From the IMG/VR virus record IMGVR_UViG_3300024239_000013, positions 255,335-319,334 of that record: a stretch of 64,000 nucleotides of DNA. The stretch is one strand, 5' to 3'. A program made the position numbers and the translations under genes. Below are positions 3,033 through 54,831 of the stretch, piece after piece (the stretch's first letter is position 1; each line of letters begins with the position of its first letter). The notes beneath the pieces are model-generated. The model did not search any database, was not told the origin of the DNA, and worked only from the letters and a program-made list of their open reading frames with translations.

Positions 3033-4892
3033 TTATTGTTGTCCAGGAGCTTTTTGATCAGGTAAATCTGCTCCGTAAGGATTAAGTGTCAATGTATCCT
3101 TAATAACTTCTTCACTCAATATATTACCAGCAGTATCAGCATAAGCATCATAACTTTGTAAAGAAGATGAAGTTTCTAATGAGCTTTGATATAATCTACC
3201 ATCACCTCTATTAAATATACTTTCTATTTCACCTCTTTCTCTGGATCTGGCATGTTTTAATGTAAAAGTAGCCTTTATCGTCGTAGGAAAATCGTCAGGA
3301 CCTAAAGCATCTCCGAATTCTATTTTTAAATCATCACAGATCAAATTACCTATCATTGCTATAGGATTACATGGATTTCCTATTGTTAAATGCCATTCTC
3401 CTATAGGAGTCCCTGTTAATAAACTTGAAGATGCCTGGATCTTTTCGATATAATCTGCTGTTACTACGTTCTGTAAAATTCTACGAAGTGCACCAGGAAA
3501 CTTTTTACTAAGATCTCTTATTTTATTAATATCTACTGTGGCTCCGTCTTTATTTGTTAATTGTAATATCTGTGCTCTCAATTCAGCTAGATCTGAATTT
3601 TCCGTTGATGTTGAAGCCCCTGGGGATATTTCTCCAGTTATTTGTGCTCCTTGAGCGGATTTTGTCGCTTGTCCCTGTGCATTTAATATTTTTTCGCCAT
3701 AAGTTAAAATAAAATTAAGCGGATCCTTATAGAATTGTAAAAGCCCTTCCTCTCCTCCAGGAAATCCCACTGCAGGGAATTCGCTATTGTATTTAATATC
3801 AGGACTTAAAAAATTACCATAGTTTGTTCCGATTGATAGTAAATTTCCCATTATATCCAGCATAGCAGCCTTAGTATTAACTTCACCGACTGATGTTAAA
3901 TCATATTCAAATACAACATTCAGATTTTCCCACGTAAACTTAAGTCCAGATTTTCTTACATAGGTATCTTTAATAACATCCATAGGAACCCATTGATATT
4001 TACTCAAAAGACCAAAATTTCCTTCAGTAGCTCTGTCCCTCAATCCACTGTACCTTCTACTTTCTACTGTTGTGTTATTGGGGTCTGCATAAATAGCTGC
4101 ATTTTCCCCTATAGACTGCAAAGCTAAAGAAAGGTCATCCGTACCTGTAACAACCCTAGCTGCTTCTGAGAACCATTTATAAGGTAAATCCCCATAGAAA
4201 CCCTTTGATGTTGCTTCCTGCGTAATGACATCTGCTTGGGTATCTTGATCCCATTCTAGTCCGGTTGTAAATTGGATTAAACTACTAAGTACATTACCGG
4301 TATTTCCACCAAACCAGGTAACAGCTTGTGCTACTGGTCTTCCTGCACCTTTAGTAAGGTAAGCTTCTGATGTCTTAACCGATTCGGGTACTGATAAATT
4401 ATCGAGAACTGGAGTTGGAAACCTTCTTAAGGTTATCATGTAATTATTAGGTATCGTTCCATAATACTTACAATATAAAAAATCTTTCCAGTAATAAGGA
4501 GCAGAAAGTCCCCCGATAATACTTTTTTCGAATTTAGAAACAAATCCGGATAACCTTCCTTCATTGTTACCGATTATAGATTCCAGATCAGAGGTCTCTC
4601 TTACTAGATATCCTGCTGAAGGATTTTTTGATTTTAGTGAGGATACTCTTCTATTATATTCGGCATTTTCCGATTTATAATAGGAATCCACAAAGTCATT
4701 TTCATTATTTCCTAATGAATAAAATAAGAACTGTCCATACGCATTTGGAGTTCTTTTTGCAGCTTCGTAGAAAAGACTTCTGGCTGTAGGTCCCTTAAAT
4801 GGATTATTTGATCCTAGATTGCTATATCGTTTTACAATCGTAGAAACATTTTTTCTTAAAAGAGTTTCTTGTAAACTTGGTCCTGGAATCAT
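3033..4892 (-). CDS. Probable baseplate/tail-tube initiator structural protein
   Basis: 619 aa; C-terminal WHLTIGNPCNPIAMIGNLIC...FPT.IKATFTLKH; upstream of gp53-like gene. Confidence 0.45.
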   Translation of the reverse strand: MIPGPSLQETLLRKNVSTIVKRYSNLGSNNPFKGPTARSLFYEAAKRTPNAYGQFLFYSLGNNENDFVDSYYKSENAEYNRRVSSLKSKNPSAGYLVRETSDLESIIGNNEGRLSGFVSKFEKSIIGGLSAPYYWKDFLYCKYYGTIPNNYMITLRRFPTPVLDNLSVPESVKTSEAYLTKGAGRPVAQAVTWFGGNTGNVLSSLIQFTTGLEWDQDTQADVITQEATSKGFYGDLPYKWFSEAARVVTGTDDLSLALQSIGENAAIYADPNNTTVESRRYSGLRDRATEGNFGLLSKYQWVPMDVIKDTYVRKSGLKFTWENLNVVFEYDLTSVGEVNTKAAMLDIMGNLLSIGTNYGNFLSPDIKYNSEFPAVGFPGGEEGLLQFYKDPLNFILTYGEKILNAQGQATKSAQGAQITGEISPGASTSTENSDLAELRAQILQLTNKDGATVDINKIRDLSKKFPGALRRILQNVVTADYIEKIQASSSLLTGTPIGEWHLTIGNPCNPIAMIGNLICDDLKIEFGDALGPDDFPTTIKATFTLKHARSRERGEIESIFNRGDGRLYQSSLETSSSLQSYDAYADTAGNILSEEVIKDTLTLNPYGADLPDQKAPGQQ

Positions 4893-47403: not shown

Positions 47404-48921
47404 TTAGATTCTTCTCGAATCCGGTCTTAATACTCTGTCACCTGAGGTAACGTTTAAAGGTCCTTCTAGTAATAAAGCTATTCTAACTAAGGTAGCTTTC
47501 ATTTCTTGTATATCTTTAGAACTTAAGCTTTCAGATTGATTATTACTTTTAGATGGATCCTTATCATCAGATTTAGAAACTGTTTTTATATCATTAACTG
47601 GTTTCTGTAAATTATTATCAGGTAAACCTGTATCTGTAGTAGAATTTTCAATAACTGATGGGGATAACTTGGACTGAGGTTTAGGGGAAAGACTAGTTAT
47701 AGACTTCTTTATCTCGGGAGCTTTTATAGCTGGAATTTTAGTAGATAGTGAAGGTATTTTATTCTCTTTAAAAGTTGGAGTTATATTTTTAGATTGTAGA
47801 GGTTCTATCTTATTTAAAAATGAATCCTGTTTATTTTTACTGAACATACTTCCTACACTCTTAGCTAAACCAACTCCAGTACCCATTAAATTATTTTTAT
47901 CTAAGCCCTTTAATAAAGATCCACCCTTTTGTATTAATTCCGAAGGATTATCTAGACCAAAATCTAAATTTTTTACTTTATTTAAAGTGTCAAAAGCACC
48001 AGATAATAGAGGGGATTCTTTTAGATTTAATTTTCCACTAAAATTTTTACCTATATTACTAACAAAACCAGAAAGAGAATCGGGACTTAATATATTTTCT
48101 ATCTTAGATGATATTGATTTATTTAAATTTCCCAATCCTTCCTTAAATATTGGATTTTTATCATCAAAATTCAAAAGTGATGACATTTCTTTTAGAGGGG
48201 ATTCTATATTCTTCAAAAGATCTGTTGGAATTAGACCCTTTATATTATCCATCACGCTATTACCAGAATTCTTGGTAAAGGTTTCAAGTATGTCATTTAT
48301 AGGATTTTCTGTGGTTTTTTTAGAGAACTCTGTTTTTATTAATTCTGGTAGTTTATCCCCCATTAACGAGTTAAATGCTTCTTCAAGATTCTTAGATTCA
48401 TTAGGTATACCCAACAAATCATTACCTTTTTTTAATAAGGTTTCCATAGAACCAGAAACGATTTCCGAAATTTTATCAGAATTTAACGGTTCGTCTGGTT
48501 TTTTAGCTATAATTTCTTTAGCTAAATTTGGAATATTTTTTATATCTGTTTTTATAACATTACTGATATCCTTTAGACCAAGATTTTCTATCCCTTTGTA
48601 AACCCCCTTGAAATCTAGAGATTTTATATCATTAGAAAGTTCTTTAAAATCTAGAGTTTTCAGGTCAGTAGAAAGACCTTTAAAATCCAGCTCACCAATA
48701 CTTTTAGTGAGCTGGTTAAATTCATTCTTTAGACTATTTAGATCTAGTCCGTTTATTTTTTCAACTACCTTTACTATTTTATCCCCACTCTCTGAACTTT
48801 TTTCGTGGGATTCTATTAAATCATCTGTAGATGCTATATTTTTTCTAATGTCGCTAGAAAGTTTATCAACGTTTCTAGACAAATCCAATAGAGAGGATAT
48901 AAGTTTTTGATCTGTGGCCAT
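47404..48921 (-). CDS. Probable tape-measure/baseplate hub protein (gp29-like position)
   Basis: 505 aa, helical, short LDFK repeats; directly after the tail chaperones. Confidence 0.4.
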   Translation of the reverse strand: MATDQKLISSLLDLSRNVDKLSSDIRKNIASTDDLIESHEKSSESGDKIVKVVEKINGLDLNSLKNEFNQLTKSIGELDFKGLSTDLKTLDFKELSNDIKSLDFKGVYKGIENLGLKDISNVIKTDIKNIPNLAKEIIAKKPDEPLNSDKISEIVSGSMETLLKKGNDLLGIPNESKNLEEAFNSLMGDKLPELIKTEFSKKTTENPINDILETFTKNSGNSVMDNIKGLIPTDLLKNIESPLKEMSSLLNFDDKNPIFKEGLGNLNKSISSKIENILSPDSLSGFVSNIGKNFSGKLNLKESPLLSGAFDTLNKVKNLDFGLDNPSELIQKGGSLLKGLDKNNLMGTGVGLAKSVGSMFSKNKQDSFLNKIEPLQSKNITPTFKENKIPSLSTKIPAIKAPEIKKSITSLSPKPQSKLSPSVIENSTTDTGLPDNNLQKPVNDIKTVSKSDDKDPSKSNNQSESLSSKDIQEMKATLVRIALLLEGPLNVTSGDRVLRPDSRRI

Positions 48922-48925
48922 ATTG

Positions 48926-48938
48926 TATATATTTATTC
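48926..48938 (-). promoter_or_regulatory. Late-promoter variant GAATAAATATATA
   Basis: 4 nt upstream of ATG 48921. Confidence 0.35.
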
Positions 48939-49174
48939 TACTTTTTTAGATTAAATACTTGTTTCACACCTCCTTCATTCTGTGCTTCTGCATTTTCAGC
49001 TTCTATGGTAGCATTTAATTTATTTAGCCATATCTGATATTCGTAGAAAGGTATGGATTCTAACCATTCTGGGTCTATTCCATGTTCTCTCCACATTCTA
49101 AACTTAATATCAAAGAAGTTCTCTAAAGATATCTGAAATAACGAAAAGAGATCTAATCCCTCTGGGAAATGCAA
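48938..49174 (-). CDS. gp51-like tail/baseplate assembly chaperone; no upstream ATG, overlaps gp26-like ORF
   Basis: SLENFFDIKF.MW..HG....LESIPFYE.QIW resembles the gp51 SLENYY..NF..H....LE..P.E pattern. Confidence 0.6.
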   Translation of the reverse strand: MHFPEGLDLFSLFQISLENFFDIKFRMWREHGIDPEWLESIPFYEYQIWLNKLNATIEAENAEAQNEGGVKQVFNLKK

Positions 49175-50195
49175 GGTAAGCGGATACCTCTTCTTGTCCG
49201 CACAATTCGCACTTTTGTTTAACGGTTAATTCAGTTCCCAATTTTATTCTTTCGGAAAGCTCAAAATATAAACTATATTCTTCTTTTGTCCAATAATCAG
49301 ATTCCCTCATTTTGAACATTATTTTTTCAGTTGTTAAATCTCTCCACTCTTCAAATAGGAAAGGTGATATTTTAAGGAATCCCTCATCTATTTCTATTCC
49401 TTTTTTAACTGAATCTGCCACAAACTTAGATATTGCTTTAGTAACTCCTATGCTAGGTATAAACATTTCTATTTTTTTACCAATTCTCTTAACATCAAAA
49501 ACAAAAGATCTAGTTTCCGGATTATAATATTCCATTATTTTTTCATCAAGTTCATATGAACTTAAAACGCCGGTTCTTAATTCTATTCCATCCTTATATG
49601 GACACTGTGGATTATTACCACATTCCTTATTTAAAGGAAGAATTATCGAATTCTCTCCTTTTACAAAAGTAAGATCCCTGATTGCCATTATAACAAAAAA
49701 TCTATCCTCCTGCTTAAGATCCATATATGAAACTACTCCTTCCCCTGGAAAATCGATTCTTAGACATCTGTCCAAGATATAGCTAAGCTTATCTTCTACG
49801 TCAAGTCTATCTTCGTCATCAATAGTCGAGAAATGTCTTATCTCTCTTACCTCAGCAGATCTTATAGCTAATTTAGATCCATCGGGATAAAAAAGACCCA
49901 TTGAAGGAAGTATTTCAACTGGAAGATTTTTCCAACCAGTATCAAAAGCTGGAGAAGCTGATTGTGCCTTACCAAAACTATTAACTAGTGGTTCCTCCGA
50001 ATTTAAACTAGATTCTAGTTTTATCGGTTCCTTTCTGATTAGATTATCAGGGATGTTAATTTGTTTTGACTGATCTATTTCTACTCCAACTACTGAACTT
50101 TGCATATTTTCGTTAGAAGTTACCGGATCATCATAAACTATTCCTCCTGACAATTCCTTATTCTTTAGAATTTCTTCTGGTGATATGTTATCCAT
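49110..50195 (-). CDS. gp26-like baseplate/tail assembly chaperone
   Basis: LPS.G.FYP, D.KQEDRFFVIMAIRDLTF, C-terminal KCELCG. Confidence 0.7.
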   Translation of the reverse strand: MDNISPEEILKNKELSGGIVYDDPVTSNENMQSSVVGVEIDQSKQINIPDNLIRKEPIKLESSLNSEEPLVNSFGKAQSASPAFDTGWKNLPVEILPSMGLFYPDGSKLAIRSAEVREIRHFSTIDDEDRLDVEDKLSYILDRCLRIDFPGEGVVSYMDLKQEDRFFVIMAIRDLTFVKGENSIILPLNKECGNNPQCPYKDGIELRTGVLSSYELDEKIMEYYNPETRSFVFDVKRIGKKIEMFIPSIGVTKAISKFVADSVKKGIEIDEGFLKISPFLFEEWRDLTTEKIMFKMRESDYWTKEEYSLYFELSERIKLGTELTVKQKCELCGQEEVSAYLAFPRGIRSLFVISDIFRELL

Positions 50196-50228
50196 AATTT
50201 TTTATTTATTCATTATATAACCAAAAAC

Positions 50229-50261
50229 AAAAAAAGAGACCAAAATTGATCTCTTTTTTTT
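50229..50261 (-). terminator. Intrinsic terminator after the tail tube genes
   Basis: AGAGATCA-attt-TGGTCTCT plus T run on - strand. Confidence 0.75.
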
Positions 50262-50285
50262 ATATAATTTAAAAAAATTATCAAA

Positions 50286-50861
50286 TTACAAGAAAAGGTC
50301 TTCCCAATAATCACAAACCCAACTAGTTGTTATTGTATAGATAGTTGCTTGTTCATAGTCTAGTTCCATGGGATTTATAGCTTCACTCAAGAAACATGAG
50401 GGTATTCTTATTCTCCTAAAAACATCCCCTCTTTTATTAAAGATTGATATTGAGATAGATCCTACATAGTCTGCTTTTATCCCCATTGCACCTGTAAGAG
50501 GATTATAAATTAAATCTGACCATTGTCTAAGTATTTTATAAACGCTCATCGAATTAGCATCATTTAAGTTAACCTCAAATTCCATGGTCAATGTCATATC
50601 ACTTTGAGAAGGTTCTCCCCCTGCATATCTTCTTGTTGCAAACTTATAGTTTTGGTTAATAGTCTGTGCAGGAGCAATATCAACAGCTAACCCTGTTATA
50701 GATTTAACTTGTTGTGCTAATATTCCCTCCCCATTAAATGCCGTTGTTGCATCTAAAATACCAGCAGGAGGATTTATAATAACTTCAAACTGGTTCAAAA
50801 ATACCGGTTCATAGTTATTTATTGCTGCTTTAGAATTCGTAAAATGTGGTAATCCTGCCAT
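50286..50861 (-). CDS. Tail tube protein paralog 2 (gp19-like)
   Basis: MAGLPHF, LRQWSDLIYNPLTG, W.CDYWEDLFL. Confidence 0.85.
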   Translation of the reverse strand: MAGLPHFTNSKAAINNYEPVFLNQFEVIINPPAGILDATTAFNGEGILAQQVKSITGLAVDIAPAQTINQNYKFATRRYAGGEPSQSDMTLTMEFEVNLNDANSMSVYKILRQWSDLIYNPLTGAMGIKADYVGSISISIFNKRGDVFRRIRIPSCFLSEAINPMELDYEQATIYTITTSWVCDYWEDLFL

Positions 50862-50878
50862 TTATTATTTTTAATTTT

Positions 50879-51433
50879 TTATAGGAATAAATCTTCCCAA
50901 TAATCAACCGCCCAAGTCATATCGTCAATTTTATATAAATCGGTAGAGGTATAATTTAAATTCATAGGAGATATTGGTTTAGTAGGAAAGCAATCCTTAC
51001 ATGTTATTCTTCTAAAAACGTCTCCTTGTTTATTAAAAATCGATATAACTATAGTTCCCGTATAGTCGCTTTTAATGCCCATTGCACCAGTCAATGGATT
51101 ATAAATCAAATCTGACCATTGTCTTAATGTTTTGAAAACATACATAGAGTTAGCATCATTAAGGTTTACAGTAAAACTTAAACTAACGTCCATAAATGTA
51201 TTTTCGGGTTTAGCTCCAGCATAATTTCTTTTAGCAAATTTATACTTTTGGCTAGTTACTCCGGGATTCTTATCTAAAGAAAGTCCGCTAACCTTAGTAA
51301 CATGTTGGAGTAATATTTCACCACCAGCTACAGCAGCAGGAGGTATTATTGTTACCTCGAACTGGTTCAGATAAACAGGTTCAAATTTGTTTATAGCTGA
51401 AAGTGAATTTTGAAAATGTGATAGTCCTGCCAT
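50879..51433 (-). CDS. Tail tube protein paralog 1 (gp19-like)
   Basis: MAGLSHF, LRQWSDLIYNPLTG, WAVDYWEDLFL. Confidence 0.85.
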   Translation of the reverse strand: MAGLSHFQNSLSAINKFEPVYLNQFEVTIIPPAAVAGGEILLQHVTKVSGLSLDKNPGVTSQKYKFAKRNYAGAKPENTFMDVSLSFTVNLNDANSMYVFKTLRQWSDLIYNPLTGAMGIKSDYTGTIVISIFNKQGDVFRRITCKDCFPTKPISPMNLNYTSTDLYKIDDMTWAVDYWEDLFL

Positions 51434-51477: not shown

Positions 51478-54400
51478 TTATACAAATTGTATAAATCCTC
51501 CTGATGATATTCCTCCTGTTTTACTAACAGTAAGTCTGTTGATGAATTTTTGAATTCCTTTTGCAGGTTCAACAATAACATCAATTATACCCATATTCAT
51601 ATCTATGATTGAAGGGGTGTTATTAGAAGCATCCATAATAGTCTGATATGCATAAATACCTCCTCCTGCTCTAACTCCATCAAGATAATTATCAACTAAA
51701 GTTTTTATCTCAAGTCTGATTGTGTCTTCATTGAAATCAAAAAGATAATTAGCTAGAATTTCTTGTACGTCAGTTTCGATACTAATTAAAAGATCTCTAA
51801 CATGTATAAGATTAAAAGCAGAGTTAACTTGTTGATAAGCAGTTTGGTTACCATAGATGGCTACACCAACCCCTCTTCTTTTTATAATTGGATTGATACC
51901 AAAAGGCTCTAAATTACCTCTATCTTCTTCATCGAAATCATATTCAACCCCTACTATATTAGATCCGCTTATTAAACCTCTTTTTTGACCAGCAATGATA
52001 GCATAAGGTTCTCCGTTAGAAAATTTTCTAAGGAAATTGTTAGAAACAAATGCTGCAGGAGGAACGTTTATATTTCTATTTCCCTCTCTTACTGTTATGT
52101 ATGGAGCATAGAAACCACAGAATTTAGCTCCATCTTCTTCGCTAGGTAAGCTGAAAGTGTAGGTTGGATTTAATGATAAATTACCTCCTTCCGTAATATA
52201 AGCTGTATTTAGCTTAGGATATGGGTTTACAGAAGTAGGAGCATCGGTAAATCTAGGGTCTGTACTAGCTCTAAATTGTTCCATAGAAGGAGCATTTATA
52301 ATAGCAAGTGCTTGTTGTCTTAGTTTAGCAAGTCTACTTAATTGATATTTAGAATTAGGTAGAATTTGACCAGAGAATGTGTCTACAATATATCTAAATG
52401 ATATAACGTCTTTAGAGGATAAAGTTTTAGCTATGTTTGTGTTGTACATAACATCTAAAATCTCTGATATTCTCGCGTCTGTTCCGTTAGGTCTATGCCA
52501 ATCATTCATACTAAATCCTGAAAGATATGAGAAATCAAAAGATCTAGTAAATTGAGCAATAGATGCAAATTTTTGAACTCTGACCCCATTAGCAGTAGAA
52601 TAGTATAATACAGGTCTTGAAGAAACTACTTTATAAATACCTGCTGTACTAGTTCTTGAAACTGATGTAATTTTAGCTAATCTATTTTGTCTGTTTCCAT
52701 TAACATTTTCACAAACATCCAAGTCTGTAGATACTACCAAGTCACCTACAGAAAATGGAACATTACCGTTCAAATCTAATCCAATAGTGAACGTATTAAC
52801 ATCTATTCTTGTACAATCAATAAATTGATTAATGGAACCATTTTTAGAAACGATATCAAATTTCTGAGTGTCTACTGGATATCCAATATTATCTGAAGCA
52901 TATGTCGTGCCAAAAGAAGGAACGTCTGTTATCGTAGCATCATCTAGATCTACATTGCTATAAGCCCTAGTATAAACTAGATTAAATTGGTCTCTATCTA
53001 CTGTAGATTCAAACCCCAAATATCTAACTTGCGTTCCTGCAGAGTTAATCCAAGCAAGATCCCCTGTAGTAATTTCCGAATATTTATGATCCTGATAAAG
53101 TTGGGATGCATTATAAGCTAAGATTGCATTAGAAATACCCAAAGGTGCTCCAGGCCCAGTTATTCCATTAGGTGTAAATATACTTTCTATATTAACATAA
53201 TCCGAATTACCAAATTGATAAGCTTTAGCGTAGAACGGTTGGCTACTTCCCGATGCTCCTGTATTATAAGAATTTAAATTATAAGTAGGGGTAACGGTTA
53301 TACCCTGAGATCTATAGAAAGGAGTATCTAAAGGATGTGTGAAATAAATTCTAAGTGCTCCAGAAACCTCCTTAGTTCCAGTAACTTTAAGTTTAACTAT
53401 ACTTGCTTCAGAGAATTGATTTATTAATGCACCTGTTAATCCCCCAGTGTATCCTGAAACTACTCCTAGTATAAATTTCTGATCGTTTGAAGAGGTAACA
53501 CTTAAGAAACTTTTAAGTTCAGCAACATCTGTATTATTTTGGATGTAACCTGCGGTAACACCATAAGTAGTTTTAGTTTGCAAATAATGTAAACCACTAT
53601 CATAAGCAGAAGGATCATAGATTTCAAAAGAATCAGAAACGATCCCTGCAGTAGCTCCTTCGGAACCGGTTAAAGTAAATAAAGTACCAACTTTAGTTCC
53701 TGTAGTAAATACAGTTGCTCCAGTTGGACTAGTAAATCCAGTAGCACCAGTTACACCAACTACTTTTTGAGAGTATAAGTAATCTGCAACTAAAACCTGG
53801 TCATAACTTAAGAAATTGATCTTTGGTGTTTTAAGGTCTCTGTCTCCTGTTAATTCATCAATTAAGTGGTTACCAACTAAATCTATTCTAGATGTATTTT
53901 GACAAATGCTATCAAATGCTTGTTCATCAATAGCACAGAATAACCCAGTTGACGGAGTATTATTATTAACTAGTGTTTGTATATACTGATTAACTCCATT
54001 TAAATCAACGAAATCTGGAATTATACATCCAGTAACATTCGTAACAATAGAAACATCAGGATCGTTTAGAAATTGATCAATTCTATCTTTTATAAATCCA
54101 TTATTGGTAAAATATTTACTCCATTTCGGATCTATTGAAAGTGCTTGATAATTTGTCCAGTTACCATAAACTGCTATAACATCAATAAAATAATCAGATA
54201 TGTAATCATAAGGGTGCATGAAACTAGGAACATTATCAGCACCATACCAATCTATTGCGAAAATATCATAACCTTTAAGCGGCTTATTAGAATCTGTAGA
54301 TTTTCTAACTATTACGCTCATAGGTGATTTACCGAGATTCGTTAAATTAAACAATTTACCTTGGTCTTCTACGCTTAGTGTTGCAAGGAAATAATTTGGA

Positions 54401-54831
54401 TCTGCAAACCAGAATCTCTCCTTATTATAATAAGAAGAATAAAGTCTGCTTGTTACAACACCATTATTTTCTTCAGTGTCAATTGAATATGATTGATATG
54501 TTGCTTTATCTGGGTTAGATGATTCTTCGTCGTCATTTAATCTTAATAGATTTAACGCAAAGACTGGTCCAGTATTTAGACATGTTAATATTGACCTTTG
54601 AAAGAAAGATCCTTTATTTTCTAGTGATCTATCGACGTCACCGAAAATAGATATAAGAGTTGTTACGTCTGGAATATAGACTGGTGTATTGAACGGTCCC
54701 TTATTAGAGAATCCTACAACTAATCTGATAGTCTGAGATGTTAATATTACATTTTGAGTTGTCTCAAATTCCAATGTATAAACTCCAGATGCTCTAAATT
54801 GAGAGTAGTCTATTTTTACCTTATTTGCCAT
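51478..54831 (-). CDS. gp18: Contractile tail sheath (gp18-like) with large insertion
   Basis: SGVYTLE, GFS.KGPFNTP, VPPAAFV, GINPI, GNQT, IHVRDLLI, VEPAKGI. Confidence 0.92.
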   Translation of the reverse strand: MANKVKIDYSQFRASGVYTLEFETTQNVILTSQTIRLVVGFSNKGPFNTPVYIPDVTTLISIFGDVDRSLENKGSFFQRSILTCLNTGPVFALNLLRLNDDEESSNPDKATYQSYSIDTEENNGVVTSRLYSSYYNKERFWFADPNYFLATLSVEDQGKLFNLTNLGKSPMSVIVRKSTDSNKPLKGYDIFAIDWYGADNVPSFMHPYDYISDYFIDVIAVYGNWTNYQALSIDPKWSKYFTNNGFIKDRIDQFLNDPDVSIVTNVTGCIIPDFVDLNGVNQYIQTLVNNNTPSTGLFCAIDEQAFDSICQNTSRIDLVGNHLIDELTGDRDLKTPKINFLSYDQVLVADYLYSQKVVGVTGATGFTSPTGATVFTTGTKVGTLFTLTGSEGATAGIVSDSFEIYDPSAYDSGLHYLQTKTTYGVTAGYIQNNTDVAELKSFLSVTSSNDQKFILGVVSGYTGGLTGALINQFSEASIVKLKVTGTKEVSGALRIYFTHPLDTPFYRSQGITVTPTYNLNSYNTGASGSSQPFYAKAYQFGNSDYVNIESIFTPNGITGPGAPLGISNAILAYNASQLYQDHKYSEITTGDLAWINSAGTQVRYLGFESTVDRDQFNLVYTRAYSNVDLDDATITDVPSFGTTYASDNIGYPVDTQKFDIVSKNGSINQFIDCTRIDVNTFTIGLDLNGNVPFSVGDLVVSTDLDVCENVNGNRQNRLAKITSVSRTSTAGIYKVVSSRPVLYYSTANGVRVQKFASIAQFTRSFDFSYLSGFSMNDWHRPNGTDARISEILDVMYNTNIAKTLSSKDVISFRYIVDTFSGQILPNSKYQLSRLAKLRQQALAIINAPSMEQFRASTDPRFTDAPTSVNPYPKLNTAYITEGGNLSLNPTYTFSLPSEEDGAKFCGFYAPYITVREGNRNINVPPAAFVSNNFLRKFSNGEPYAIIAGQKRGLISGSNIVGVEYDFDEEDRGNLEPFGINPIIKRRGVGVAIYGNQTAYQQVNSAFNLIHVRDLLISIETDVQEILANYLFDFNEDTIRLEIKTLVDNYLDGVRAGGGIYAYQTIMDASNNTPSIIDMNMGIIDVIVEPAKGIQKFINRLTVSKTGGISSGGFIQFV

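What the first reader, a model, noticed from the sequence alone, without database searches (positions are those of the whole stretch)
48938..49190. Probable programmed frameshift joining the gp26-like and gp51-like chaperones (G/GT paradigm in a T4-like phage)
Seen: gene order tube, tube, chaperone, short overlapping ORF, tape-measure-like gene. The short ORF lies in the +1 frame, overlaps by more than 60 nt, and has no ATG before its conserved-looking SLENFF block. Two candidate sites: CTT-TTC (49143-49148; a -2 or +1 slip to TTT gives ...RSLF-SLFQISLENFF) and CTT-TGA (49110-49115; the RF2-type +1 signal). Known: long-tailed phages commonly frameshift between tail chaperone genes, with -1 in lambda and -2 in Mu; T4 gp26 and gp51 are treated as separate genes.
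Basis: partly seen in the sequence, partly recalled or inferred. Interest (0 to 1): 0.7.

Follow-up and report, generated by a model that had tools for sequence, protein, structure and literature searches.

The report
Frameshifted tail chaperone in jumbo phage
In this 319-kb phage, a short gene piece with no conserved start codon is almost certainly added to the end of the tail-assembly chaperone when the ribosome slips on a run of T's; the same design (with a different slip) appears in marine T4-like phages, whereas phage T4 itself carries two separate genes, 26 and 51.

Summary
On the minus strand the order is sheath, tube, tube, ORF1 (50195-49110, 361 aa), a short ORF in the +1 frame (open 49224-48938), then the tape-measure gene (48921-47404). 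All 47 related junctions examined have the same +1-frame arrangement: 37 IMG/VR contigs and 10 GenBank jumbo/megaphages. No start codon is conserved. In the close clade the overlap is almost invariant at the nucleotide level. Frame-0 wobble positions are invariant at 12/15 sites in the overlap against 7/98 upstream (p = 4e-9). A U-run motif, NNU-[C/A]UU-UUC (window TCT CTT TTC, 49151-49143), is present in every non-Lak lineage. Profile comparisons link ORF1 to T4 gp26/gp51 (93.8%, E 1.7e-7) and ORF2 to the gp51 C-terminus (94.8%, E 5.4e-8). The most likely product is a 418-419 aa gp26-gp51-like fusion made by a -2 or +1 slip at the U-run, alongside the 361-aa product, following the lambda G/GT pattern. 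The CTT_TGA site and the TTG start are rejected. Separately, marine T4-like phages carry a perfect -1 heptamer, U_UUU_UUC, at the homologous point of gene 26, ahead of their short "gp51". No experimental evidence was available. The slip direction is unresolved.

The parts
49110..50195 (-). ORF1: gp26-like tail/hub assembly chaperone, the frame-0 product (361 aa, ending ...GIRSLFVISDIFRELL). It carries two Cys pairs (C192/C198 and C329/C332).
   Evidence: phrog_36717, E 4.9e-21; hhalign against the T4 gp26/gp51 plus marine gp26 alignment gives 93.8%, E 1.7e-7 over 211 columns; 2 of 11 family members hit phrog_150; a relative's ORF1 carries a weak PF12322 T4_baseplate hit.
49142..49151 (-). Proposed shift site. 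Frame 0 reads TCT CTT TTC G (S349 L350 F351). Frame +1 reads (T) CTC TTT TCG. A tandem -2 slip re-pairs CUU onto CUC and UUC onto UUU. A +1 slip re-pairs CUU onto UUU.
   Evidence: CTCTTTTC is invariant in all 37 close junctions (window plus 36 IMG/VR contigs; 24 distinct flanking sequences). NNT-[C/A]TT-TT[C/T], with the T-run starting at codon position 2, is present in all non-Lak lineages. Searches give the conservation profile.
49110..49153 (-). Dual-coding overlap: the frame-0 tail (VISDIFRELL, then stop) and the frame +1 block (SLFQISLENFF), almost invariant at the nucleotide level.
   Evidence: Frame-0 wobble positions are invariant at 12/15 sites here against 7/98 upstream (Fisher p = 3.8e-9). 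Frame +1 wobble positions are invariant at 8/14 sites here against 2/57 downstream (p = 1.1e-5).
48938..49144 (-). ORF2: the +1-frame extension (68 aa from the TCG codon to the TAG at 48940-48938), homologous to the C-terminal part of T4 gp51 and to the short 'gp51' of cyanophages. It is the T-like domain of the fusion.
   Evidence: phrog_634, E 2.8e-5. (E 3.2e-6 in the phage's own genome, the only copy); hhalign 94.8%, E 5.4e-8 over 58 columns; wobble variation with period 3 in the +1 frame downstream of the ORF1 stop.
49110..49115 (-). CTT_TGA, an RF2-like shifty stop at the end of ORF1.
   Evidence: replaced by CTT GGA TAT TAA in L036, L040, L041 and L042, and absent in PTm1, PAU, MaF61, LR756502 and others; the block upstream of it is homologous to translated gp51 sequence.
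49172..49174 (-). TTG, the only canonical start codon in the +1 frame before the conserved block. Not supported as a start.
   Evidence: not conserved. Four lineages (L044, L004, L005, L008) have no ATG, GTG or TTG upstream at all; positions between the TTG and the T-run vary in ways that change the +1-frame residues.
47404..48921 (-). Tape-measure protein gene (505 aa), immediately downstream of ORF2.
   Evidence: 8 of 9 syntenic orthologues hit PHROG tape-measure families (phrog_8892 6.7e-7, phrog_5062 1.4e-6, phrog_19914, phrog_1538). The window's own copy gives no hit.
50286..51433 (-). Two tail-tube paralogues (51433-50879, 184 aa; 50861-50286, 191 aa).
   Evidence: phrog_32623, phrog_45, phrog_3629; a weak PF06841 gp19 hit.
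51478..54831 (-). Tail sheath (1117 aa).
   Evidence: phrog_34521, E 1.3e-121.
50229..50260 (-). Terminator-like hairpin (14 bp stem followed by a T-run) between the second tube gene and ORF1. A second one follows the tape-measure gene at 47364-47340. No such signal lies between ORF1 and ORF2.

Best explanation
ORF1 encodes the phage's tail/hub assembly chaperone, a distant homologue of T4 gp26/gp51. Most ribosomes terminate at the TGA (49112-49110) and make the 361-aa protein. A fraction change to the +1 frame on the U-run at 49151-49142 (UCU CUU UUC G) and continue through ORF2. This gives a 418-419 aa fusion whose last 68 residues correspond to the C-terminal domain of T4 gp51.

Two slips would reach the +1 frame:
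- A tandem -2 slip. The P-site tRNA-Leu moves from CUU to CUC and the A-site tRNA-Phe from UUC to UUU, giving the junction ...RSLF|SLFQ. I put this at about 55%, given that a shift occurs.
- An RF2-like +1 slip of tRNA-Leu from CUU onto UUU, giving ...RSL|SLFQ. About 35%.

By analogy with lambda gpG/gpGT, the shared N-terminal part would coat the tape-measure protein encoded just downstream. The extension would recruit tube or hub components, and a fixed ratio of the two forms would be needed for tail assembly.

Shown here: the gene arrangement, both homologies, the lack of a conserved start, the conserved U-run and the dual-coding constraint. Inferred: that the ribosome actually shifts, the direction and efficiency of the shift, and the binding partners.
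For: 1. Synteny is sheath, tube, tube, ORF1, ORF2, tape measure.
2. The +1 frame is open across the ORF1 stop in 47 of 47 related junctions, spanning roughly 22-76% protein identity. These include PTm1, MA9V-1, MaF61, PAU, four LR7565xx huge phages and the Lak phages. Three further lineages found through ORF2 homologues also have +1.
3. No start codon is conserved. Four lineages have none upstream. The window's Met codon at 49096-49094 is TTG, CTA, TTA, CTT or CTC in close relatives. In MA9V-1 the conserved QPSEI block lies before any possible start. Among 69 hits in 1.84 billion representative proteins, the calls that look like genuine homologues are short ORFs (44-180 aa) starting at inconsistent profile positions (1, 13, 25, 27). 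No long protein carries the domain as a C-terminal extension; the only two longer hits, of 757 and 311 aa, match in 9 and 3 repeated stretches rather than at the C-terminus, and only the 311-aa one was inspected.
4. The dual-coding signature starts 3 nt before CTCTTTTC and ends at the ORF1 stop (p = 4e-9 and 1e-5).
5. The NNU-[C/A]UU-UUC motif, in a fixed codon phase, is present in all nine non-Lak lineages.
6. ORF1 matches gp26/gp51 (hhalign 93.8%, E 1.7e-7), and the alignment ends exactly at G.(R/K)S(L/I)F against GL..FF. ORF2 matches the gp51 C-terminus (94.8%, E 5.4e-8).
7. T4 gp51 is a natural in-frame equivalent of the predicted fusion. T4 gp26 and gp51 both belong to phrog_150, and only gp51 has the phrog_634 tail.
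8. The complete 319-kb genome has one ORF1 and one ORF2, with no separate full-length gp51.
9. Four independent assemblies show no indel at the junction.
10. Marine T4-like phages have the -1 heptamer T_TTT_TTC at the homologous point. It is present in 65 of 65 distinct IMG/VR junctions.
11. Shifts of -1, -2 and +1 are all documented for tail-chaperone genes (PMC5009743).
Against: - There is no experimental evidence: no protein, ribosome-profiling or reporter data.
- No downstream RNA structure stands out (z = -0.16 and -1.0), and no conserved SD-like stimulator was found. What would drive an efficient shift is therefore unknown.
- For a +1 slip, the A-site codon UUC is not a slow codon. For a -2 slip, P-site re-pairing is perfect only in the TCT CTT TTC lineages.
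- Some distant lineages have a 45-65 aa linker and a start codon at or near the site. L140 has an ATG that coincides with its T-run. L139 has a GTG and no T-run. Independent initiation may operate there.
- Cyanophage gp51 ORFs have an ATG 4 codons after the heptamer.
- The near-invariance of the overlap would also arise if the +1 frame were translated by some other route.
- The structure model was poor (pLDDT 43.6), and the complex prediction gave no answer.
Confidence: 0.8

Rival explanations
1. ORF2 is a separate small gene translated by its own initiation, either at TTG 49174, at ATG 49096, or by termination-reinitiation coupled to the ORF1 stop. No fusion protein is made.
For: The window has a TTG at 49174 with an AAGAGG string 12 nt upstream, and an ATG at 49096. 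Some distant lineages have an ATG or GTG at or near the junction and a 45-65 aa unique N-terminal stretch. Cyanophage 'gp51' ORFs have an ATG just after the heptamer and are annotated as free genes.
Against: Neither start is conserved. The TTG is absent in most relatives, and the ATG is replaced by Leu codons. Four lineages have no start upstream, and L044 has no ATG in ORF2 at all. The conserved protein block starts at the U-run, before any start in MA9V-1 and LR756500. The frame relation is always +1 with an overlap, which independent initiation would not require. T4 gp51 is the fused form. The close relatives mostly infect Bacteroidota, where, from general knowledge, SD-led initiation is not the rule.
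Confidence: 0.1
2. The shift is real but occurs at the RF2-type shifty stop CTT_TGA (49115-49110). There, tRNA-Leu slips +1 onto UUU while the stop codon waits in the A site.
For: CUU_UGA is the classical prfB +1 site (general knowledge). It is present in the window and in most of the close clade. The Lak phages lack the internal U-run and have GAT TTT TAA, a U-run plus stop, so they probably do use a shifty stop.
Against: The site is lost in L036, L040, L041 and L042 (CTT GGA TAT TAA). It is absent in PTm1 (TTA TTA TGA), MaF61, PAU, LR756502 and LR756504. A shift here would leave SLFQISLENFF untranslated. That block aligns with the translated, non-overlapping EDLESYY region of cyanophage gp51, and it is conserved at the protein level across distant lineages.
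Confidence: 0.06
3. The junction is a frameshift mutation, pseudogene or sequencing error in what was once a single gp51-like gene. Alternatively, the extra product arises from transcriptional slippage on the T-run.
For: T4 gp51 shows that a single-ORF version exists. Homopolymer runs are common sites of error.
Against: The arrangement is the same in 47 of 47 genomes and in 4 independent assemblies with no indel. Both frames are under purifying selection. The frame-0 tail ending ELL is conserved and is shared with the C-terminus of T4 gp26. From general knowledge, a run of four T is too short for RNA-polymerase slippage.
Confidence: 0.03

Closest known systems
Lambda gpG/gpGT and the conserved tail-assembly-chaperone frameshift of long-tailed phages (Levin 1993; Xu, Hendrix and Duda 2004, 2013, 2014; as summarised in PMC5009743)
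   Same: Two overlapping ORFs lie between the tube gene and the tape-measure gene. The second ORF has no start of its own. A slippery site sits a few codons before the stop of the first ORF. A short product and an extended product are predicted.
   Different: There is no sequence similarity to gpG/gpT. ORF1 is much larger (361 aa against 140 aa) and carries Cys pairs. The net shift is +1/-2, not -1. The motif is U CUC UUU UCG rather than G GGA AAG. Nothing has been tested experimentally.
Phage Mu tail chaperone -2 frameshift (cited in PMC5009743)
   Same: A myovirus tail-chaperone pair whose second frame is reached by a net +1 change. A -2 slip is a documented route.
   Different: Whether this case is -2 or +1 is unresolved. 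No homology to the Mu proteins was tested.
T4 gp26 and gp51 (hub assembly chaperones; PF12322 T4_baseplate; phrog_150 and phrog_634)
   Same: ORF1 is homologous to the shared gp26/gp51 body and ORF2 to the gp51-only C-terminal tail. The frame-0 product ends ...ELL, as gp26 does.
   Different: In T4 these are two separate, divergently transcribed paralogous genes with no slippery run (TTC TTT GAG at the gp26 end). Here there is one gene plus a recoded extension. ORF1 has an extra N-terminal region of about 85 aa. The window protein does not reach Pfam's PF12322 threshold.
Short 'gp51' of T4-like cyanophages, KVP40 and pelagiphage HTVC008M (noted as about 20% of the length in Sullivan et al. 2010, PMC3037559)
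   Same: It has the same domain as ORF2, lies directly after a gp26 homologue and overlaps that gene's end.
   Different: In those phages the frame is -1 and the site is the canonical heptamer U_UUU_UUC (HTVC008M: U_UUU_UUU followed by UAA), 1-2 codons before the stop. I found no paper describing this as a frameshift.
prfB (RF2) +1 frameshift at CUU_UGA
   Same: CUU followed by U allows tRNA-Leu to re-pair on UUU. The window also has a literal CUU_UGA at the ORF1 stop.
   Different: At the favoured site the A-site codon is a sense codon (UUC). No SD sits 3 nt upstream. The literal CUU_UGA is not conserved.

Membership tests
G/GT-type tail assembly chaperone frameshift | The ORF pair is located between the major tail/tube gene and the tape-measure gene. 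| tested here: met
   the tube paralogues lie upstream, and the orthologues of the downstream gene hit tape-measure PHROGs.
G/GT-type tail assembly chaperone frameshift | The second ORF overlaps the 3' end of the first in another frame and lacks a conserved initiation site. | tested here: met
   the +1 frame in 47 of 47 junctions, with no conserved ATG, GTG or TTG.
G/GT-type tail assembly chaperone frameshift | A conserved slippery sequence lies near the end of the first ORF, in a fixed codon phase. | tested here: met
   NNT-[C/A]TT-TTC in all non-Lak lineages, and CTCTTTTC invariant in the close clade.
G/GT-type tail assembly chaperone frameshift | A fusion protein is made at a low, fixed ratio, and both forms are needed for tail assembly and absent from virions. 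| not testable with these tools
   No proteomic or ribosome-profiling data were available.
G/GT-type tail assembly chaperone frameshift | The common part binds the tape measure and the extension binds the tube protein. | tested here: inconclusive
   the complex prediction of ORF2 with both tube paralogues returned 'no answer' (score 0.00).
T4 gp26/gp51 family (PF12322, phrog_150 and phrog_634) | Sequence homology of the body to gp26/gp51. | tested here: met
   hhalign 93.8%, E 1.7e-7 over 211 columns; 2 of 11 members hit phrog_150 (best E 5.3e-5); a relative carries a weak PF12322 hit.
T4 gp26/gp51 family (PF12322, phrog_150 and phrog_634) | A Pfam PF12322 hit by the window protein itself above the gathering score. 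| tested here: not met
   no PF12322 match at E <= 0.1. Membership rests on profile-profile evidence only.
T4 gp26/gp51 family (PF12322, phrog_150 and phrog_634) | A gp51-specific C-terminal domain. | tested here: met
   phrog_634, E 2.8e-5; hhalign 94.8%, E 5.4e-8.
T4 gp26/gp51 family (PF12322, phrog_150 and phrog_634) | A C-terminal CxxC knuckle just before the G.(K/R)..F motif. | tested here: met
   window C329-x2-C332 aligns with the T4 gp26 CPEC motif. KVP40 has CPKC.
RF2-type +1 shifty stop | A conserved CUU_UGA (or equivalent) with an upstream SD-like element. | tested here: not met
   the site is not conserved within or beyond the close clade, and no SD lies 3 nt upstream.
-2 programmed frameshift (Mu, arterivirus nsp2TF) | A sequence that allows re-pairing of the tRNAs two bases upstream. 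| tested here: met
   Read directly from the sequence: CUU to CUC and UUC to UUU in the window clade, LR756500 and MaF61. Only the tRNA-Phe re-pairing holds in the other lineages.
-2 programmed frameshift (Mu, arterivirus nsp2TF) | A downstream stimulator (an RNA structure or a protein-binding motif). | tested here: not met
   the fold z-scores are -0.16 and -1.0, and nothing stands out.

The most novel reading that the evidence does not exclude
The gp26/gp51 pair of T4-type contractile tails is the long-missing counterpart of lambda G/GT. On this reading the ancestral state is a single gene with a recoded C-terminal extension. That state survives as a -1 shift on U_UUU_UUC in cyanophages, KVP40 and pelagiphages, and as a -2 tandem slip on U_CUC_UUU_UC, with no RNA structure, in Bacteroidota jumbo/megaphages. 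T4 would have replaced recoding with a gene duplication. That would bring T4-type tails under the rule of a frameshifted tail chaperone and add a new -2 slippery motif.
Probability: 0.4. Interest if true: 0.75.

Novelty: new member of a known kind. Interest (0 to 1): 0.62.

Why it matters
Frameshifted tail chaperones are among the most conserved recoding events known, but T4-type phages have been treated as the exception. The roles of T4 gp26 and gp51 are still described only as "hub assembly chaperone" or "essential protein of unknown function" (PMC3004832).

This locus and its relatives suggest a direct, testable reading: gp26 corresponds to G and gp51 to GT. In practice, dozens of jumbo-phage, megaphage and cyanophage genomes carry a mis-annotated, truncated small ORF at this position. 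It should instead be annotated as a recoded extension.

The site also offers a candidate structure-independent -2 (or +1) slippery motif for translation studies.

Tried and rejected
- **Structure of ORF1.** The AlphaFold model, built from 15 sequences, had pLDDT 43.6 and pTM 0.28. That is too poor for a fold search, so none was run.
- **Complex of ORF2 with the two tube paralogues.** The result was "no answer" and counts as evidence neither way.
- **RNA structure downstream of the site.** Nothing exceeded the shuffled controls. A small hairpin pairs AGAGGGAU with the slippery stretch itself. It was not tested for conservation.
- **Tape measure against T4 gp29.** hhalign found no relation, and Pfam and NCBIfam gave nothing. 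Identity as a tape measure rests on PHROG hits of the orthologues. The Atlas feature search gave only a weak lead to PF25671.
- **BLASTP of ORF2 against T4 gp51, and tblastn of ORF2 against the phage collection.** These were too insensitive. Profiles were needed.
- **The search for related loci with the divergent alignment A1.** It failed for lack of a conserved stretch.
- **Literature.** Six full-text searches found no description of a gp26/gp51 frameshift; a seventh, on tail-chaperone frameshifts in jumbo phages, listed two unrelated papers that were not read. Closed-access papers cannot be excluded. One GenBank record (Acinetobacter phage Octan, MT409116) already names its gp51 homologue "tape measure protein assembly chaperone".
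- **Rejected readings.** These are an assembly error, the TTG or ATG starts, and the CTT_TGA site.
Full report
**What is there**

All the relevant genes lie on the minus strand. In the direction of transcription they are:
- large terminase, 56737-54914
- a 1117-aa sheath, 54831-51478
- two tube paralogues, 51433-50879 and 50861-50286
- ORF1, 50195-49110 (361 aa)
- a short ORF in the +1 frame, open 49224-48938
- a 505-aa gene, 48921-47404

The frame-0 codons TCT CTT TTC occupy 49151-49143, and CTT TGA occupies 49115-49110. The only canonical start in the +1 frame ahead of the conserved block is the TTG at 49174. The first ATG is at 49096.

The window is the last 64 kb of a 319,334-bp virus record that CheckV rates as complete. 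Its relatives are jumbo and megaphages of Bacteroidota (Tenacibaculum PTm1, Chryseobacterium MA9V-1, Flavobacterium MaF61, the Prevotella Lak phages, and the LR7565xx huge phages) together with Sphingomonas phage PAU. It is therefore not a T4-like phage in the strict sense.

**Is it real?**

Four independent public assemblies, from wastewater, freshwater and another sample, hold 48800-50300 at over 99% identity. None has an indel between 48900 and 50196. The frame break is therefore not an assembly error.

**Comparative test**

I collected 37 IMG/VR relatives (55-75% identity to ORF1), 36 of which span the junction, and 10 GenBank relatives (22-34% identity). In all 47 related junctions the +1 frame is open across the ORF1 stop and encodes the same block: [LIV]F S L [FI] Q .. 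L. N [FY][FYL] ... P ... [LI].. [LIM] P [FWY] Y E [YF].

The annotated small ORFs in PTm1, PAU, MA9V-1 and MaF61 start at internal ATGs that cut this block.

No start codon is conserved:
- The window's TTG is missing in most relatives.
- The window's ATG is TTG, CTA, TTA, CTT or CTC in close relatives. This is the pattern of an internal Leu/Met position, not of a start.
- L044, MaF61, LR756500 and LR756501 have no ATG, GTG or TTG upstream of the block at all.
- In MA9V-1 the conserved QPSEI motif precedes the first possible start.

A profile of ORF2 searched against 1.84 billion representative proteins found 69 hits. The calls that look like genuine homologues are short ORFs (44-180 aa) that begin at inconsistent profile positions (1, 13, 25, 27). 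No long protein carries the domain as a C-terminal extension; the only two longer hits, of 757 and 311 aa, match in 9 and 3 repeated stretches rather than at the C-terminus, and only the 311-aa one was inspected. This is what gene callers produce from a recoded extension.

**Dual-coding signature**

I aligned 24 distinct close sequences.
- Upstream of the overlap, frame-0 wobble positions are invariant at only 7 of 98 sites.
- Downstream of the ORF1 stop, frame +1 wobble positions are invariant at only 2 of 57 sites. Each region is therefore under ordinary purifying selection in its own frame.
- Between 49153 and 49110, invariance rises to 12 of 15 frame-0 wobble sites and 8 of 14 frame +1 wobble sites (Fisher p = 3.8e-9 and 1.1e-5).
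- The extra constraint begins 3 nt before the CTCTTTTC string. It does not begin at the TTG 24 nt upstream. Between the TTG and the U-run, the +1 frame changes residues freely.

**The site**

Every non-Lak lineage has NNT-[C/A]TT-TT[C/T], with the T-run starting at codon position 2 of frame 0, 35-47 nt before the ORF1 stop. The variants are:
- TCT CTT TTC: window clade, LR756500, MaF61
- TAT CTT TTC: PAU
- AAT CTT TTC: LR756504
- CAT ATT TTC: PTm1
- GGT or AGT ATT TTC: LR756502 and LR756501
- TCT ATT TTT C: MA9V-1

This supports two mechanisms:
- **A -2 slip.** tRNA-Phe moves from UUC to UUU in all lineages. In the TCT CTT TTC group, tRNA-Leu also moves from CUU to CUC, which makes a perfect tandem re-pairing. 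The invariant T at the wobble position of the preceding codon supplies the middle base for the P-site tRNA.
- **A +1 slip.** tRNA-Leu or tRNA-Ile moves from [C/A]UU onto UUU, as in RF2.

I favour -2 slightly, but sequence alone cannot decide. The Lak phages lack this run and have GAT TTT TAA at the ORF1 stop, a good +1 shifty stop.

It is lost in L036, L040, L041 and L042 and is absent in the distant lineages. A shift there would also skip SLFQISLENFF, which is homologous to translated gp51 sequence.

I found no significant RNA structure downstream.

**What the proteins are**

ORF2 hits phrog_634, "baseplate hub assembly catalyst" (E 2.8e-5).

T4 gp26 (208 aa) and gp51 (249 aa) both belong to phrog_150. 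Only gp51 has the phrog_634 tail, at residues 147-246.

A profile of the ORF1 family aligns with a gp26/gp51 profile over 211 columns (93.8%, E 1.7e-7). The alignment includes the C-terminal CxxC and ends at G.(K/R)S(I/L)F against GL..FF, which is exactly where the shift site lies. The ORF2 family aligns with the gp51 C-termini (94.8%, E 5.4e-8). A relative's ORF1 also carries a weak PF12322 hit, although the window protein itself does not reach Pfam's threshold.

Eight of nine orthologues of the downstream 505-aa gene hit four PHROG tape-measure families. The hits presumably rest on the GG.V...G.YLVGEKGPE motif those orthologues share, which the window's copy has lost.

The locus therefore reads tube, chaperone, extension, tape measure. 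T4 gp51 is a natural in-frame version of the predicted fusion, and gp26 is a natural version of the short product. Like the window's frame-0 product, gp26 ends in ELL. The window's genome has no second copy of either part.

**A wider pattern found on the way**

Sullivan et al. 2010 remarked that the "gp51" of cyanophages and marine vibriophages is only about 20% of the T4 length (PMC3037559). I found the following in P-SSM2, S-PM2, Syn9, KVP40 and pelagiphage HTVC008M:
- The short ORF lies directly after a gp26 homologue ending ...LEGLQSFF(V/A/G).
- It lies in the -1 frame.
- The canonical heptamer T_TTT_TTC (HTVC008M: T_TTT_TTT TAA) sits 1-2 codons before the stop.

The heptamer is present, in phase, in 65 of 65 distinct cyanophage-type junctions from IMG/VR. 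The phrog_150 profile is covered by two consecutive frames in P-SSM2 and HTVC008M, but by a single ORF in T4 gp51.

Six full-text searches found no paper describing a gp26/gp51 frameshift; a seventh, on tail-chaperone frameshifts in jumbo phages, listed two unrelated papers that I did not read.

**Caveats**

- Nothing here is experimental.
- The driver of an efficient shift is unknown.
- In some distant lineages, ORF2 homologues have a 45-65 aa linker and a start codon at or near the junction. L140 has an ATG that coincides with its GTT TTC run. L139 has a GTG and no T-run. They still lie in the +1 frame and overlap ORF1, but independent initiation may operate there.
- The structure prediction was poor, and the complex prediction gave no answer.

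**Verdict**

This is a new member of the known class of frameshifted tail-assembly chaperones, in a protein family (gp26/gp51) not previously linked to recoding as far as I could find. It also gives a useful reading of T4 genes 26 and 51. My confidence that a fusion is made by a shift into the +1 frame is about 0.8. The direction of the slip (-2 or +1) is unresolved.

Noticed in passing
L054 (P-SSM2) 1513-1528; L055 (S-PM2) about 1552-1567; L056 (Syn9) about 1501-1516; L057 (KVP40); L058 (HTVC008M); L059-L138: In marine T4-like phages, the short 'gp51' ORF overlaps the end of gene 26 in the -1 frame. A perfect heptamer T_TTT_TTC sits 1-2 codons before the gp26 stop. It is present in 65 of 65 distinct IMG/VR junctions. 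This looks like an undescribed -1 programmed frameshift that produces a protein equivalent to T4 gp51.
   Followed up: partly
L006 and L009 (Lak-B5, Lak-C1) about 3780-3795: The Lak megaphages lack the internal T-run but end ORF1 with GAT TTT TAA, a +1 shifty stop. Their +1-frame extension has an extra linker of about 40 aa. Lak-B5 has an in-frame stop codon at the position where Lak-C1 has Glu; if that codon is TAG (not checked here), this would fit the TAG recoding I recall being reported for these phages.
   Followed up: partly
window about 48300-48420 (minus strand; residues about 170-205 of the 505-aa protein): The window's tape-measure orthologue has lost the GG.V...G.YLVGEKGPE..V.L..G..VIPN motif present in all 8 orthologues examined. 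It gives no tape-measure PHROG hit itself. Orthologue lengths vary from 480 to 570 aa.
   Followed up: partly
window 50260-50229 and 47364-47340 (minus strand): Terminator-like hairpins bracket the ORF1-ORF2-tape-measure unit. A 14-bp stem with a T-run lies between the second tube gene and ORF1. It could lower expression of the chaperone relative to the tube protein.
   Followed up: no
L001, L002, L003, L005, L007, L008, L009 (3' ends of the ORF2 homologues): ORF2 homologues in distant lineages end in a basic C-terminal motif such as FKMPKSPKFK, FRMPKMKKFW or YKVPKFKTPKI. The window clade lacks it and ends ...GVKQVFNLKK.
   Followed up: no
L140 about 300-350; L139 about 40-110: Two metagenomic lineages carry a linker of about 60 aa before the gp51-like block. 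In L140 an ATG in the +1 frame coincides with the GTT TTC run (A ATG TTT TCG). L139 has no T-run and a GTG inside the GGT GGA codons. These may be cases of independent initiation or of a different shift site.
   Followed up: partly
window 49170-49155 (minus strand): Because of the triplet homopolymers TTT CCC ... GGG, frame 0 and frame +1 both read F-P-x-G here (AFPRG and HFPEG). This makes the +1 frame look conserved upstream of the real shift site.
   Followed up: yes
L048 (T4) 3803-3830, minus strand: T4 gp26 ends ...KEFFELL, the same C-terminal ELL as the window's frame-0 product and those of LR756500 and PTm1. This suggests the short product's own tail is functional. T4 has TTC TTT GAG here, with no slippery run.
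   Followed up: partly
window 49161-49143 (minus strand): The predicted fold contains a small hairpin in which AGAGGGAU pairs with AUCUCUUU, so the slippery stretch forms the 3' arm. Its conservation was not tested.
   Followed up: no
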